64,000 nt of DNA from Macrostomum lignano. Taxonomy: Eukaryota. The notes below the pieces were generated by a model, which saw nothing but the letters and a program-made list of their open reading frames with translations, had not been told where the DNA came from and made no database searches. The stretch lies in contig NIVC01003490.1 in assembly GCA_002269645.1 (NCBI GenBank), positions 1 to 64,000 on the forward strand. The letters are read 5' to 3'. Both the position numbers and the translations under genes were made by a program. Positions 54,748 to 63,551 of the stretch are shown here, one piece after another; the first letter of the stretch is position 1; each line of letters opens with the position of its first letter.

Positions 54748-55245
54748 CACCCAACCCACTGCACCCACCCCAATTGACCCAACCCACTGCACCCACCCCA
54801 ATTAACCCTACCCACTGCACCCACCCCAACTCAGCCAACCCACTGCACCCACCCCAATTGACCCAACCCACTGCACCCACCCCAACTCAGCCAACCCACT
54901 GCACCCACCCCAATTGACCCAACCCACTGCACCCACCCCAACTCAGCCAACCCACTGCACCCACCCCAATTGACCCAACCCACTGCACCCACCCCAACTC
55001 AGCCAACCCACTGCACCCACCCCAATTGACCCAACCCACTGCACCCACCCCAATTGACCCAGCCCACTGCACCCACCCCAATTGACCCAACCCACTGCAC
55101 CCACCCCAATTGACCCAACCCACTGCACCCACCCCAATTGACCCAACCCACTCACCCACCCCAATTGACCCAACCCACTGCATCCACCCCAATTCACTCA
55201 ATCCACTACACCCACCCTAATTGACCCCACCCACTGCACCCATCC
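54748..55245. repeat. 28-bp array (CCAACCCACTGCACCCACCCCAATTGAC)
   Basis: About 17 copies. Confidence 0.9.
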
Positions 55246-57089
55246 TAATTCTTTAATAGCCATTCTTCCAGCAGCGTACCGCTCTGGCGGATTTCCTTTC
55301 AACTTGAAGGCCCTTTCTTGCTGGTGCATTCTGTTCGGTTGTATCCCATGTCTATGCTATAAATCAAAGCAAACAATAAACAGAAGTTCACCATAGACAA
55401 AAGGTATTCAAGCTATCGTGTTCGATGTACTCTTTATCTGTATTTTTTGCTGTCGCTGTTGCCGCACTGCAGCTTTCCCTGTGCCTATTTGTTTGTTTAT
55501 TTGTTTTTCCTATCGAACTTCATTTCAGGATTTAAAAACAGATAAATATATATTATTGAGTCTGTGAAAATGACGCGAACACGCGTCGCTTTTTTCTATA
55601 ATTTCTCGATTTGAACAATATTAAAAAGTTTCGAATATGCTTCCGTTCCATTGTTAATTACAAATGAATAAAATTATACCAACAGGCAATAAATAATAAA
55701 TAAGTAGTTCGAAAGAGTAAATAAAGACGGATTACCCGTGTATTTTTTGCAAAATTTTAATTAATAATTGACACGTGCGCAATTAAAATTGTGAGAAAAA
55801 CTTCGATCGCTACTTACTAGAAAGCGTCGATCAACAGTAGTATGTTCATTATATAGCACCAGATATTGCGTGAGTGAAGAAAATAAACAGTATTTTCTTA
55901 TGTATATATAAAAAAGCTTGAGGTGAGCACTGTGCATCCGTGGACAGGCGTTCAGACAGCCTATCTAAGCAAATTAGCTCAACTAAAAAAGGCTGTTTTG
56001 TTCCCGTCAGGTTGGCCGAAATTTCTCTTCTTTTAAAACGCAAAACAAAAGCGATCGCGGTAAAGGCGGCGACAGCAGCAGCAGGCAAAGCGAACAACAG
56101 CTCAGCAGTGACGCATCATGTCATTAGACACAATATATCAAATAGAAAAAACTGCTTTGAGATTATATTGATTGGTTTTAAATTAATTAGCTGCATATAA
56201 ACTGGAAAACTTTAAATTTATTTCCAATATATTACTAGTAGCATAGTTGGAATATTAACTTTAAAAAGCATTTGCTAGGTGCCCTTCAAGCGCTTGATCT
56301 GATTCAAAGCTTAAAAATTCAGCCAAAATTATAGCATTTTAACAAACCCAGATGTAACTTAACAATCTACAAGACACATTAACTGCAATTTCTATTCCTA
56401 TAGTAGTACAGACAGAAGATTCGCCCGAAATTTCTAGCAGTCCCAGCAGTGCAGCCAGATTGTTTCTACAAAAAAGCCAATTACGAGTATTATTAAAAGC
56501 ATCGTTGCGAGGACGAACTGATATGCTGTTTATTTTGTGCCATAAAATTCAAACCGTACTCAACCATAGATTTGGACAAAAGCGGAAAAACCGCGGAATT
56601 CCCTCGGAAAACGCATGCAATTTCTAGCCGAAGAATAAATGAAACAATAAAAGACAAGCGAAAGAAACAGCAGACCAGTCAGGAGAGAGCATGTAAACAA
56701 ATAAAATTGTTTTATCACATAAAATCGAATAGTTGCGTGCAATAATTGAGATTTACAAATAAATAGGGGATTTAATAATAGTGAGTACAGATAAATATTG
56801 TAAGAATGACAACCAATATCTTAATAATACACTGGGTACATCTCAACCACTTCTAACCGCAGAAATACTTAAAGCAGCCATGGTACACTTTAACTAATAA
56901 TGAATCAATGACACCTCCTTTTACACATTGAACAGCTTGTGCGATTATTTTCTAAAGCACAGGTTTCCAGTCAAGGTTGTGTAAACAAAGCCAATCATTA
57001 AAAGCTTGCAACCAATGCATCAAATCCTACGAGTATGAGCTTCTTCAAAATCTTCAAATGGCTGGTTTTTGGAGATTGGTTTGTCTACC

Positions 57090-57470
<381 letters not shown>

Positions 57471-57537: not shown

Positions 57538-58172
57538 TCAGGGCGGAGGCGGGGCCGGCTTGTTGCCGTACCGCAGCCGCTCGAATCCGGCGGGCAGGTC
57601 GGGCAGCCGGGCTCCGCCACCTCCGTGCCCGCCGAAGCCTCCGCCGTTGCCGTCCAATTCGGCATCGTCGGGCATGCGAGCTGGCGGCTTCTCCTCCGGC
57701 AGCACCAACGGCCCGCCGCCGCCGTCACCGTCAGCCGACACTCTGGAGGAGCCCGACGTCATCGCCGCCGTCCCTGACGCCGGTGGCCAGAGTCGGTTGT
57801 CGTCCAGCTCTTCAGCAAATATCACCGGCACGTGTTTCTTCGTCACAAGGGTGTCGTGCAAATAGGGATCGTAATCCTCGTCGCCGGCCTCTCGACGCCT
57901 CTGGCGCCTGCTGCTGGAGCGCCTGTACAGACAGCAGACAATGACCAGGGCGGCGAATAGAAACAGCACGATAGCCAGCAGGGACAGCACCAGGGCCAGG
58001 AAGAAGTCCGCATTATCGGCTGCGGCCACGACGGCGGTCCCGGGTGCTGCGGACGAGCCGAGCGGGGTGGCGCCGCCACGGGCGATGGCCTCCTCGCTGG
58101 CCTCGGCAGGCATTGGGCAGCGCTGGACCGAGTTAATTGCGGGCGGAGCGGAGCTGTAGCAGAGACCGGCCA
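57538..58172 (-). CDS. DAG1: Beta-dystroglycan-like terminal exon (TM helix + cytoplasmic tail); no upstream exons found
   Basis: TM segment [27 protein letters not shown], basic stop-transfer [11 protein letters not shown], then [18 protein letters not shown] and [10 protein letters not shown], matching dystroglycan ATFIKKGVPIIFADELDD and PLILQEEKAP. Likely acceptor at 58173-58174 (an in-frame TAA lies just upstream); in-frame ATG at 58113; stop TGA 57540-57538. Confidence 0.72.
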
Positions 58173-58454
58173 CTGGGCAGCGGGTGAATTATTGGGAGAC
58201 AGGCTGTGAGAACCTGCAGCATCATCACTATGAAAGTCCGGATCCCCGATTCTTAATCTAAATCCTACATCCCAATCCTAGAACCGAAATCTTGAAAATA
58301 TCCCAAAGTAGAGAGTCCCGATTCCATGGTTTTAGTTTCTCACTCCCATAGTCTGGATTAATTACCTTGATCTTTAATCCCACAACCTACATAGATTCTC
58401 AAACCATAGTCAAGAGCCTCAGTCCTACTAAGCAGATCCCCAGCCCGACAACCC

Positions 58455-58800
58455 AACCTAGATTCCTAATCCCACAGCCTAGATCCCTAATCCCACAACC
58501 TAGATTCCTAATCCCACAACCTAGATTCCTAATCCCACAACCTAGATTCCTAGTTTCACAGCCTAGATTCCTAATCTTACAACCTAGATTCCTAGTTTCA
58601 CAGCCTAGATCCCTAATCCCACAACCTAGATTCCTAATCCCACAACCTAGATTCCTAGTTTCACAGCCTAGATTCCTAATCTTACAACCTAGATTCCTAA
58701 TCCCATAATCTAGATTCCTAATCCCACAGCCTAGATTCCTAATCCCACAACCTAGATTCCTAATCCCACAGCCCAGATTCCTAAACCCACAACCTAGATC
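58455..58800. repeat. 21-bp array (CCTAGATTCCTAATCCCACAA)
   Basis: About 16 copies between RAD54 and the dystroglycan-like exon. Confidence 0.9.
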
Positions 58801-59421
58801 CTTACCAAAAATCCAATTACTACTCTAAAGGTAAAAATACTCACATTACACTACTCTGTGAAAAGACAAGAGCAACATAGCAAATTAATTGGGCATAATG
58901 CTGTCAGATTATACTGCTAATACCAGGTGTTATTTTCCAATAAAAATCGCAGTACACCATAATAAACGGTGAGAGTAGTAGATAACCATAACTACAATAA
59001 ATGATATTTCTGAATTGGCTGGAAACGGTTTTGTTAGGAAACAAAGTACGGAAAAAATGATTAAAACTAAACAAAAATGCTTGCAGAAGGACTGAAAATT
59101 GAATATTCCAATGGTTTATGCAAAAGTATGATTTGGCAATGCTGTATTATCAATGATATGATAAATGCTGACAATTTTTTGTAGAAACTGAGACCCATGG
59201 ACTTTAAATCTTATAAGAAGCACCGCAGGTGTGACTTAATCTTGTGAATTAGAATTTATTCTTAAACAAGCTAGAAACCGCAATACCTGTACCTAATGAA
59301 TATTAAGTATTGACTATGAAAATCAGGGTCAATGACAACACAACTGCAACTGGTACACGTTTAGGCTGGCAAACAGGTCTGGAATTCGTTAAGTAAACGT
59401 ACAGTTTTAATCCAAAAATTT

Positions 59422-63551
<4,130 letters not shown>

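What the first reader, a model, noticed from the sequence alone, without database searches (positions are those of the whole stretch)
57538..59421. Orphan beta-dystroglycan exon directly downstream of RAD54
Seen: the TM and cytoplasmic tail of a dystroglycan lie 1.25 kb after the RAD54 stop on the same strand. The gap holds only a 21-bp array and AT-rich DNA, with no room for the several-hundred-residue ectodomain. Acceptors at 58174 and ~58214 and an ATG at 58113 are available. Three hypotheses: (a) an SL-trans-spliced operon partner encoding a 191-aa ectodomain-less mini-dystroglycan; (b) RAD54 nested in the same orientation inside a large dystroglycan intron whose other exons lie beyond 64000; (c) a truncated duplicate or RAD54 read-through chimera. 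(a) or (b) would be unusual.
Basis: partly seen in the sequence, partly recalled or inferred. Interest (0 to 1): 0.7.

Follow-up and report, generated by a model that had tools for sequence, protein, structure and literature searches.

The report
Ectodomain-less dystroglycan-like gene behind RAD54
The "orphan exon" is most likely a complete single-exon gene of the flatworm Macrostomum lignano, lying behind RAD54 in an ordinary flatworm operon, and it encodes only the membrane anchor and inner tail of dystroglycan without the outer laminin-binding part.

Summary
The RAD54L stop is at 59422-59424. A 1.25-kb AT-rich gap with a 21-bp array follows, then an AG acceptor (58174-58173) and an open frame to 57538. 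That frame encodes a TM helix and a beta-dystroglycan-like tail (Pfam DAG1 29 bits; HHalign 95% against the human tail).

The window is Macrostomum lignano contig NIVC01003490.1. The same RAD54L, DG-like, MFS order occurs on two further contigs. A second family, 41% identical and also about 200 aa, sits behind a different gene (FARS2-like).

Every annotated transcript starts at the acceptor. No ectodomain-like coding sequence was found in the gaps, in the RAD54 introns or in the 10 kb upstream. The tail is under purifying selection.

Such operons are routine in this species.

The start codon is probably the AUG at the 3' end of the SL. The neighbouring RAD54L, listed as trans-spliced, has no genomic ATG and would read MRRSLAPS that way.

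The window's copy has a 1-nt deletion that breaks this frame, leaving the ATG at 58113. No SL reads could be checked here. The operon is ordinary; the tail-only dystroglycan relative is moderately novel.

The parts
59422..59682 (-). Last coding exon of RAD54L (aa 691-776) with the TAG stop at 59424-59422. Earlier exons lie at 61319-60513, 62233-61955 and 63554-62793. The first two exons are beyond the window, at record positions of about 72.8 kb and 66 kb.
   Evidence: tblastn of P0241 (PAA51179.1) on the window; Pfam; gene table
59431..59436 (-). AATAAA overlapping the last RAD54 codons (ATG AAT AAA ATG TTA TAG). A second AATAAA lies at 59260-59255. These are candidate poly(A) signals of the upstream cistron.
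   Evidence: sequence read directly; function inferred
58454..58799 (.). 21-bp tandem array with 16.5 copies here and 30.5 and 41.5 in the sister loci. It inflates the intercistronic spacer.
   Evidence: TRF
58173..58174 (-). AG of the proposed (trans-)splice acceptor CCCAG|TGG; the exon begins at 58172. The 5'-partial CDS annotated in GenBank starts at 58176. An alternative AG lies at 58215-58214 (CTGCAG|, which fits the published [T/C]TNCAG motif), and a further one, CTACAG|, ends at about 58155.
   Evidence: motif from PMC8629364
57538..58172 (-). Single coding exon of the DG-like gene (P0001, 212 aa as annotated), with the TGA stop at 57540-57538
58128..58129 (-). Site of a 1-nt deletion relative to both sister copies (AACTCG-GTCC against AACTCGAGTCC). 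It puts the acceptor and the SL-AUG out of frame with the DG-like ORF in this copy only.
   Evidence: three-locus alignment
58111..58113 (-). In-frame genomic ATG (MPAEASEE...), which gives a 191-aa product. It is present in all three family-A copies and absent from family B.
57928..58005 (-). Transmembrane helix [26 protein letters not shown], followed by the basic cluster [13 protein letters not shown] (57927-57889)
   Evidence: positive-inside topology is inferred
57799..57840 (-). [14 protein letters not shown], the core beta-dystroglycan juxtamembrane motif (human KKGVPIIFADELDD). It is identical in 12 of 12 residues between families A and B despite synonymous changes.
57682..57711 (-). 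[10 protein letters not shown], aligned in the same order with human PLILQEEKAP
   Evidence: HHalign
57541..57585 (-). C-terminus [15 protein letters not shown]. It resembles the dystroglycan dystrophin-binding site (YRSPPPYVPP) but lacks the final Tyr of PPx[11 protein letters not shown] is invariant between families, with 7 of 10 codons changed synonymously.
   Evidence: human peptide checked against PDB 6jjy_U
57093..57468 (.). (TCTG)n microsatellite directly 3' of the stop, presumably inside the 3' UTR. The next AATAAA or ATTAAA on the minus strand is at 56776 and 56534.
   Evidence: UTR extent not verified

Best explanation
The feature is a complete single-exon gene of Macrostomum lignano. 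It is not a stranded exon of a larger dystroglycan gene.

Transcription (inferred): it is transcribed with the upstream genes as the last member of a same-strand cluster, SF3B6-like, then RAD54L, then the DG-like gene. Its mRNA is released by polyadenylation of RAD54L and by trans-splicing of the 35-nt spliced leader (SL) onto the acceptor at 58174-58173.

Translation (inferred): the M. lignano SL ends in AUG. That AUG is the likely start codon in the two sister copies (M-WPVSA...) and in the paralog family (M-AQY...). In the window's copy a 1-nt deletion breaks that frame. This copy therefore either uses the genomic ATG at 58113 (191 aa), or is a defective allele, or carries an assembly indel.

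Product (shown from sequence): about 190-212 aa with no signal peptide. It has a poorly conserved Ser/Thr/Ala/Pro-rich N-terminal stub of 50-55 aa, one TM helix, a basic juxtamembrane cluster, and a conserved tail homologous to the beta-dystroglycan cytoplasmic domain. The PPxY tyrosine is missing.

Function (inferred): a membrane protein with its N-terminus outside and C-terminus inside, inserted without a cleavable signal peptide. It would present a dystroglycan-type cytoplasmic docking tail without any link to laminin. That makes it a genetically encoded counterpart of the TM-plus-tail beta-dystroglycan fragment that vertebrates produce by proteolysis.
For: - Organism and copies: the protein is PAA-annotated in M. 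lignano GCA_002269645.1. Three copies on three contigs share the order RAD54L, DG-like, MFS on the opposite strand.
- Second family: P0110, P0115 and P0116 are 41% identical, 200-204 aa, and have the same layout. They lie behind a FARS2-like gene and before a JmjC gene.
- Transcript starts: all six annotated CDSs are 5'-partial and begin within a few nt of an AG acceptor. P0116 begins exactly after TTCCAG|, which fits the published SL-acceptor motif [T/C]TNCAG (PMC8629364).
- Need for an external start: family B has no Met before its TM helix or conserved motif, so an external AUG is required.
- SL sequence: the SL ends in ...TTGCATG (PMC8629364). Use of the SL AUG as initiator is documented in flatworms (Cheng et al. 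2006, cited in PMC9851317).
- In-locus control: RAD54L is listed as TRANSSPLICED (PMC5816591 supplement). Its first exon starts after TTTTGCAG| with CGG CGA AGT CTC GCG CCC and has no genomic ATG. SL-AUG gives MRRSLAPS, which matches the human RAD54L N-terminus as I recall it. It too is annotated 5'-partial.
- Shared transcription unit: RAD54L and the DG-like gene of one sister locus share a transcriptional-unit prefix, Mlig008284g2 and g3 (naming rule in PMC5730564).
- Spacer: 903-917 nt after removing the array, below the 1-kb operon criterion.
- No ectodomain: no DG-type domain in the gaps, in ORFs of 55 aa or more in the RAD54 introns and the 10 kb upstream, or among called genes upstream. 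The A and B gaps share no conserved exon.
- Selection: tail dN is 0.43 while dS is above 2. Motifs have zero non-synonymous change while synonymous sites are saturated.
- Dystroglycan homology: Pfam DAG1 above its cut-off, BLASTP E=2e-7, HHalign 95%.
Against: - No RNA reads were available, so neither SL addition at 58172 nor co-transcription with RAD54L was seen directly.
- The acceptor CCCAG lacks the T-rich part of the published motif. The annotated CDS starts of two family-A copies include the CAG, 3-4 nt upstream of the junction, which a clean trans-splice site would not give.
- An alternative acceptor, CTACAG| about 18 nt downstream, would turn the SL-AUG into a 7-codon upstream ORF. The genomic ATG would then be the start, and the 1-nt indel would be harmless.
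- In the window's own copy the SL-AUG is out of frame.
- Family B alone scores only 13.4 bits against Pfam DAG1.
- Family B's spacer is 3.7 kb, or 2.7 kb without tandem repeats, so it is above the operon threshold.
- I could not establish whether M. lignano also has a canonical full-length dystroglycan.
- The word-indexed protein search appears to list only hits up to about 1.75 times the query length. therefore does not exclude longer proteins. The exhaustive phmmer search found none.
Confidence: 0.65

Rival explanations
1. Nested-gene model, the reader's (b). The exon is the last exon of a large canonical dystroglycan gene whose ectodomain exons lie more than 23 kb upstream, with SF3B6-like and RAD54L nested in its last intron.
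For: The ORF is open up to the acceptor and is annotated 5'-partial. The contig continues 12 kb beyond what I could read (record 82838-95103). An uncharacterised 833-aa gene lies at the far end of L007, but on the opposite strand.
Against: Deep RNA-seq-based annotation gives a single-exon transcript in all six loci. No DG-type domain appears in the RAD54 introns, in the 10 kb upstream, or among called genes in three loci. The paralog family has the same truncated layout behind an unrelated gene, so two independent nestings would be needed. The exhaustive phmmer search found no longer protein carrying this tail.
Confidence: 0.07
2. Dead fragment or chimera, the reader's (c). The exon is a truncated duplicate of a dystroglycan gene, or a RAD54 read-through product, with no function of its own.
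For: The window's copy has a 1-nt deletion that puts the acceptor out of frame with the ORF. There is no genomic start codon upstream of the TM in family B. The three family-A copies are over 99% identical, so they say nothing about constraint.
Against: Families A and B diverged to saturation at synonymous sites, yet they keep the [15 protein letters not shown](L/M)VLP and [10 protein letters not shown] intact. Tail dN/dS is below 0.2. Transcripts are annotated for all copies. RAD54L ends with its own stop and AATAAA. No M. lignano protein with a closely related tail and an ectodomain exists in the collection.
Confidence: 0.08
3. Missing 5' exon. The gene is a small type I membrane protein whose short first exon (Met plus signal peptide) lies in the spacer and was missed by the annotation. 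The acceptor would then be an ordinary cis-splice site in phase 0.
For: Dystroglycan is a type I protein with a signal peptide. The acceptor is in phase 0 at a similar distance from the TM (50-55 codons) in both families, as expected for an inherited intron position. The annotated 5' ends scatter by a few nt.
Against: No similarity exists between the A and B spacers that could be a shared exon. The spacers are AT-rich repeats, at 38-43% GC against 68% in the family-A exon. The neighbouring RAD54L shows the same 5'-partial-at-acceptor signature and is documented as trans-spliced.
Confidence: 0.1
4. Not dystroglycan-derived. This would be a flatworm-specific small membrane adaptor that shares only short linear motifs and a TM with beta-dystroglycan by convergence.
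For: Similarity is confined to about 70-90 residues, part of which is a hydrophobic TM. Family B is below the Pfam threshold (13.4 bits). There was no PDB sequence hit. The defining IG2_MAT_NU module and PPxY are absent.
Against: Two motifs align in the same order at 55% identity over 40 columns outside the TM, with HHalign probability 95% and E=2.7e-8. Family A passes the curated Pfam DAG1 threshold. The C-terminus, Y-x-x-K-P-P-P-P at the very end, resembles the dystrophin-binding site in both position and composition.
Confidence: 0.15

Closest known systems
Dystroglycan (DAG1), beta subunit: TM plus cytoplasmic domain (Pfam PF05454)
   Same: It has a single TM, a basic juxtamembrane cluster, the KKxVPxIFAxELDD and PLxLxEEKxP motifs in the same order, and a proline-rich extreme C-terminus preceded by Tyr.
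   Different: It has no signal peptide, no alpha subunit, and no IG2_MAT_NU module or Gly-Ser maturation site. Adams & Brancaccio 2015 (PMC4582122) found that module in the dystroglycans of every phylum. The C-terminus is ...[10 protein letters not shown], so it lacks the PPxY tyrosine needed for the dystrophin WW domain. Total length is about 200 aa instead of about 900.
The TM-plus-tail beta-dystroglycan fragment of about 30 kDa made by metalloprotease cleavage in vertebrates (from my own knowledge)
   Same: It is an ectodomain-less, membrane-anchored beta-DG tail.
   Different: Here the truncated form is encoded as such by a separate gene, rather than produced by proteolysis of a full-length receptor. 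A functional equivalence is untested.
SL trans-spliced operons of Macrostomum lignano (Wudarski 2017, PMC5730564; Ustyantsev & Berezikov 2021, PMC8629364)
   Same: Same-strand neighbours; a spacer under 1 kb after subtracting repeats; an AG acceptor at the 5' end of the downstream gene; an upstream gene that is itself trans-spliced; and a shared transcriptional-unit name for RAD54L and the DG-like gene.
   Different: The raw spacer (1.25-1.8 kb) is far from the 100-nt mode. SL reads at this gene were not seen here.
Flatworm mRNAs that take their initiator Met from the 3'-terminal AUG of the spliced leader (Cheng et al. 2006 J Biol Chem 281:733, cited in PMC9851317)
   Same: The SL ends in AUG. 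The ORF is open and in phase from the acceptor with no genomic start, in family B and in RAD54L. It is in phase in two of the three family-A copies.
   Different: This was documented experimentally in Schistosoma, not in Macrostomum. The window's own copy is out of phase.

Membership tests
Dystroglycan (DAG1) | Beta-DG transmembrane helix plus conserved cytoplasmic core (KKxVPxIFAxELDD ... PLxLxEEK) | tested here: met
   Pfam PF05454 scores 29.2-29.3 bits against a cut-off of 23.3 for family A. BLASTP against the human tail gives E=2e-7. HHalign gives 95.2%, E=2.7e-8. Family B alone is below threshold at 13.4 bits.
Dystroglycan (DAG1) | IG2_MAT_NU ectodomain module with the alpha/beta maturation site, reported in the DGs of all phyla (PMC4582122) | tested here: not met
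   Only 50-55 poorly conserved residues precede the TM. No Pfam DG, Ig or cadherin-like domain appears in the 1.25-kb and 3.7-kb spacers, or in ORFs of 55 aa or more in the RAD54 introns and the 10 kb upstream. No such gene is called upstream in three loci.
Dystroglycan (DAG1) | C-terminal dystrophin-binding site with PPxY (YRxPPPY) | tested here: not met
   The C-terminus is [10 protein letters not shown](A/P)PPPP-stop in all six copies, with no Tyr after the prolines. The human peptide was verified against PDB 6jjy_U.
Dystroglycan (DAG1) | N-terminal signal peptide, type I topology, alpha-DG IG1/S6 and mucin region | tested here: not met
   There is no hydrophobic N-terminal segment in the ORF read from the acceptor. 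No alpha-DG-like sequence was found in the loci. Actual membrane topology cannot be tested here.
M. lignano SL trans-spliced operon gene | Same-strand upstream gene with a repeat-adjusted intergenic distance below 1 kb (criterion of PMC8629364) | tested here: met
   The distances are 1249, 1561 and 1788 nt, and 903, 915 and 917 nt after removing the 21-bp array. Only tandem repeats were subtracted, not transposable elements.
M. lignano SL trans-spliced operon gene | SL-containing reads mapping to the acceptor at the 5' end of the downstream gene | not testable with these tools
   No RNA-seq data were accessible. The indirect signs are that annotated 5'-partial CDSs start at the acceptor in six loci, and that the same signature occurs in RAD54L, which is listed as TRANSSPLICED.
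M. lignano SL trans-spliced operon gene | Both genes belong to one assembled transcriptional unit | tested here: inconclusive
   The GenBank locus tags Mlig008284g2 (RAD54L) and Mlig008284g3 (DG-like) sit on the same contig. The prefix marks a cluster of similar transcriptional units (PMC5730564), so sharing one unit is likely but not proven.
SL-AUG-initiated ORF (flatworm) | SL ends in AUG; the acceptor is in phase with the ORF; no in-frame stop and no usable genomic AUG upstream of the conserved region | tested here: inconclusive
   This is met for family B in 3 of 3 copies and for RAD54L in 3 of 3. Two of the three family-A copies are in phase, but they also carry a genomic ATG. The window's copy is out of phase. 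Translation was not tested.

The most novel reading that the evidence does not exclude
Macrostomum carries an old, selectively maintained family with two diverged paralogs. Its members are tail-only dystroglycan relatives: small membrane proteins without a signal peptide, translated from a start codon donated by the spliced leader. They keep the beta-dystroglycan cytoplasmic docking motifs but have lost every extracellular matrix-binding part and the PPxY dystrophin site. If no canonical dystroglycan exists in this flatworm, these would be all that remains of the receptor. That would mean the intracellular scaffold role of dystroglycan can persist on its own, uncoupled from laminin and dystrophin.
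Probability: 0.3. Interest if true: 0.65.

Novelty: new variant of a known kind. Interest (0 to 1): 0.42.

Why it matters
Comparative work on dystroglycan concluded that the IG2_MAT_NU ectodomain module, the TM and the tail with its dystrophin-binding site travel together in all phyla (PMC4582122). A conserved gene family that keeps only the TM and tail would be a natural separation-of-function variant. It could show what the cytoplasmic domain does without matrix binding.

The locus is also a clear example of how SL-donated start codons lead to genes being deposited as "partial hypothetical proteins". RAD54L next door shows the same artefact.

The gene arrangement itself, a downstream operon gene behind RAD54, is routine for this species and needs no special explanation.

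Tried and rejected
- The word-indexed homolog search with the exon peptide returned only the window's own cluster. A RAD54 search showed that this tool lists only hits up to about 1.75 times the query length, and it also missed the 41%-identical paralog. Its negative result therefore carries little weight.
- PDB sequence searches with the peptide and with the six-sequence profile gave no dystroglycan hit. Solved beta-DG chains mostly stop at the start of the conserved KKGVPIIFADELDD motif, or earlier, or are short C-terminal peptides.
- Exhaustive phmmer against 1.84 billion representatives found only the two M. lignano families. The other four hits are TM or low-complexity noise. Canonical dystroglycans score too low (about 35 bits) to surface at that database size, so the search says nothing about whether M. 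lignano has one.
- Literature and supplement searches for the gene identifiers, or for dystroglycan in Macrostomum or planarians, found nothing specific. The one supplement hit concerned RAD54L.
- An 11-nt match to the SL (ATTTATTGCAT) lies 17 nt upstream of the family-B acceptor. I considered it as a trace of retroposed SL-mRNA and set it aside, because 9-11-nt matches to the AT-rich SL half occur elsewhere in these loci.
- I did not run a structure prediction. The product is one TM helix plus low-complexity tails, so a model would not discriminate between the hypotheses.
Its first 59 and last 21 residues were confirmed against PDB chains; the middle part was not.
Full report
**What is there**

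Both genes read on the minus strand of the window.

- RAD54L exons lie at 63554-62793, 62233-61955, 61319-60513 and 59682-59425. The TAG stop is at 59424-59422.
- After a 1249-nt spacer with 38% GC comes an AG at 58174-58173. The spacer contains a 21-bp array at 58454-58799.
- From the AG, a frame stays open to the TGA at 57540-57538.
- The frame encodes a TM helix (58005-57928), a basic cluster, [24 protein letters not shown] and a C-terminal [15 protein letters not shown].
- Pfam DAG1 matches the TM and juxtamembrane part at 29.2 bits, above the curated cut-off of 23.3.
- BLASTP against the human beta-dystroglycan tail gives E=2e-7.
- A profile comparison gives 95% probability and aligns the two tail motifs in the same order at 55% identity.

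**Where it comes from**

An exact-sequence look-up places the window at positions 1-64000 of contig NIVC01003490.1 of GCA_002269645.1. Cluster members name the organism as Macrostomum lignano.

The protein has two near-identical siblings, PAA82862.1 and PAA65104.1, on two other contigs. All three loci show the same order: RAD54L (775-776 aa), the DG-like gene (208-212 aa), and an MFS transporter on the opposite strand.

The three loci are over 99% identical, even in non-coding DNA, but they differ in the copy number of the 21-bp array: 16.5, 30.5 and 41.5. That rules out a local misjoin. It also means the three copies cannot inform on selective constraint.

**A second family**

An exhaustive phmmer search of 1.84 billion representatives found only one further significant relative, at E=3.8e-12 and 41% identity. 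It is again from M. lignano, again in three copies (PAA67431.1, PAA54198.1, PAA79140.1), again 200-204 aa, and again annotated as partial.

This family B lies behind a FARS2-like gene and before a JmjC gene, all on one strand.

Families A and B are saturated at synonymous sites. Even so, they keep [12 protein letters not shown] (12 of 12 residues), [10 protein letters not shown] (10 of 10, with 7 codons changed synonymously) and P(L/M)VLP.

- Tail dN is 0.43 while dS is above 2.
- The 50-residue N-terminal stub is almost unconstrained.

The tail is therefore a translated, selected sequence, and the family is old. It is not a recent broken duplicate.

**Is there an ectodomain anywhere?**

I found none. 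The evidence is as follows.

- Three-frame Pfam scans of the family-A spacer and the 3.7-kb family-B spacer found no dystroglycan, Ig or cadherin-like domain.
- After retrieving RAD54L itself, I read 10 kb upstream of it in all three loci.
- The RAD54L gene spans 11-13 kb. The next gene upstream is a same-strand 123-138-aa RRM protein resembling SF3B6/p14, which ends 1.3 kb before the first RAD54L exon. Beyond it lies an opposite-strand gene.
- A Pfam scan of all non-repetitive ORFs of 55 aa or more from that 10 kb and from the RAD54L introns returned only the RRM domain.
- The A and B spacers share no sequence that could be a common upstream exon.

For the nested-gene model to hold, two diverged paralogs would each need an unrelated gene nested in the last intron. 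In addition, deep RNA-seq-based annotation would have had to miss the junctions in six loci.

**How the mRNA is probably made**

*Published background.* In M. lignano about 30% of genes receive a 35-nt spliced leader, CGGTCTCTTACTGCGAAGACTCAATTTATTGCATG. About 15% of genes lie in operons whose spacers are often inflated by repeats. The published operon criterion is a repeat-adjusted distance below 1 kb to an SL-spliced downstream gene, and the acceptor motif is [T/C]TNCAG (PMC8629364). The genome annotation cuts assembled transcriptional units at SL and poly(A) signals, and names genes by the unit's cluster prefix (PMC5730564).

*What this locus shows.*

- The spacer is 903-917 nt after removing the array.
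- RAD54L is listed as TRANSSPLICED (PMC5816591 supplement).
- In one sister locus RAD54L and the DG-like gene carry the tags Mlig008284g2 and Mlig008284g3.
- All six DG-like CDSs are 5'-partial and start within a few nucleotides of an AG.
- In family B one CDS starts exactly after TTCCAG|.

These are the expected marks of an SL-spliced downstream gene. No SL read was seen here, so trans-splicing remains an inference.

**The start codon**

The SL ends in AUG. Flatworm SL AUGs are known to serve as initiators (Cheng et al. 2006, via PMC9851317).

The neighbouring RAD54L is a useful in-locus control. Its first exon begins after TTTTGCAG| with CGG CGA AGT CTC GCG CCC and has no genomic ATG. With the SL it reads MRRSLAPS, which is the human RAD54L N-terminus as I recall it. 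GenBank lists it as partial for the same reason.

Family B has no Met before its TM helix or conserved motif. Its exon is in phase with the SL AUG in all three copies.

In family A, the acceptor CCCAG|TGG is in phase in the two sister copies. The window's copy lacks one A between 58129 and 58128. There, the SL AUG would open a frame of about 110 codons that is not DG-like, and the ATG at 58113 would be the only route to the DG-like product (191 aa).

I cannot tell which of three readings of the deletion is right:

- a PacBio assembly indel;
- a defective allele;
- harmless, which it would be if splicing used the CTACAG| site 18 nt downstream. In that case the SL AUG opens only a 7-codon upstream ORF, and all copies start at the genomic ATG.

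**What the protein is and is not**

*What it keeps.* It has the beta-dystroglycan TM, the basic juxtamembrane cluster and two tail motifs. Its C-terminus resembles the dystrophin-binding site in position and composition.

*What it lacks.* It has no signal peptide, no alpha subunit and no mucin region. [quoted passage not shown] I therefore do not file it as a dystroglycan. It is a dystroglycan-tail-like paralog family.

*Inferred topology.* With strongly positive residues after the TM and an uncharged stub before it, the likely orientation is N-terminus out and C-terminus in. The stub carries an N-x-S sequon in family B.

*Proposed function.* I propose a membrane-anchored docking tail that works independently of laminin. 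This is inference only.

**Verdict**

The DG-like gene is already deposited, though only as a partial hypothetical protein. The new point is the recognition of a conserved, tail-only dystroglycan relative that probably starts at an SL-donated AUG. This is moderately interesting. It rests on sequence inference and awaits RNA-level confirmation.

Noticed in passing
L007 9960-10040 (record NIVC01003490.1 about 72840, outside the window); same in L008 and L009: RAD54L has no genomic start codon. Its first exon begins directly after TTTTGCAG| with RRSLAPS, so the AUG at the end of the spliced leader would give MRRSLAPS, the same N-terminus as human RAD54L. GenBank lists the protein as partial.
   Followed up: partly
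L007 8306-8698 (record 74532-74140), L008 8621-8992, L009 8228-8644: A small RRM protein resembling SF3B6/p14 lies on the same strand, 1.3 kb upstream of RAD54L, across another tandem repeat. This makes a three-gene same-strand cluster, SF3B6-like, RAD54L and DG-like, closed by a convergent MFS transporter gene (its end is at window 53667).
   Followed up: partly
L007 14405-15454 (record 68433-67384) and L009 13351-14400; absent from L008: A 350-codon open Tc1/mariner-type transposase frame sits in a RAD54L intron in two of the three sister loci. It is an insertion polymorphism between the copies.
   Followed up: partly
window 59431-59436 (-): An AATAAA overlaps the last codons of RAD54L (ATG AAT AAA ATG TTA TAG). 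If used, it would give an extremely short 3' UTR. A second AATAAA lies at 59260-59255.
   Followed up: no
window 57093-57468, 59711-60509, 62308-62759, 55003-55250: Long microsatellite and minisatellite arrays flank and interrupt the genes: (TCTG)n right after the DG-like stop, about 200 copies of (AGAC) and a 22-bp array in RAD54L introns, and a 28-bp array downstream. The whole window is unusually rich in such arrays.
   Followed up: no
L004 9970-9980, L005 9973-9983, L006 9961-9971: An 11-nt exact match to the 3' part of the spliced leader (ATTTATTGCAT) lies 17 nt upstream of the family-B acceptor in all three copies. Similar 9-11-nt matches occur elsewhere in AT-rich DNA, so it is probably chance.
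   Followed up: partly
tool behaviour: The word-indexed protein search listed no hit longer than about 1.75 times the query (467 aa for a 267-aa query). It also missed a 41%-identical paralog that phmmer found at E=4e-12. Negative results from it should be read with care.
   Followed up: partly
UniRef entries P0120 and P0243 against GenBank P0241: Older M. lignano RAD54L models differ from the GenBank ones. They read through the acceptor upstream (VQAFRISPACLVLKPDRFALLQ-RRSLAPS), skip 19 residues after RRPL, and one ends in ...EEKNACPDDE instead of ...[11 protein letters not shown]. This suggests allelic or assembly differences at the 3' end.
   Followed up: no
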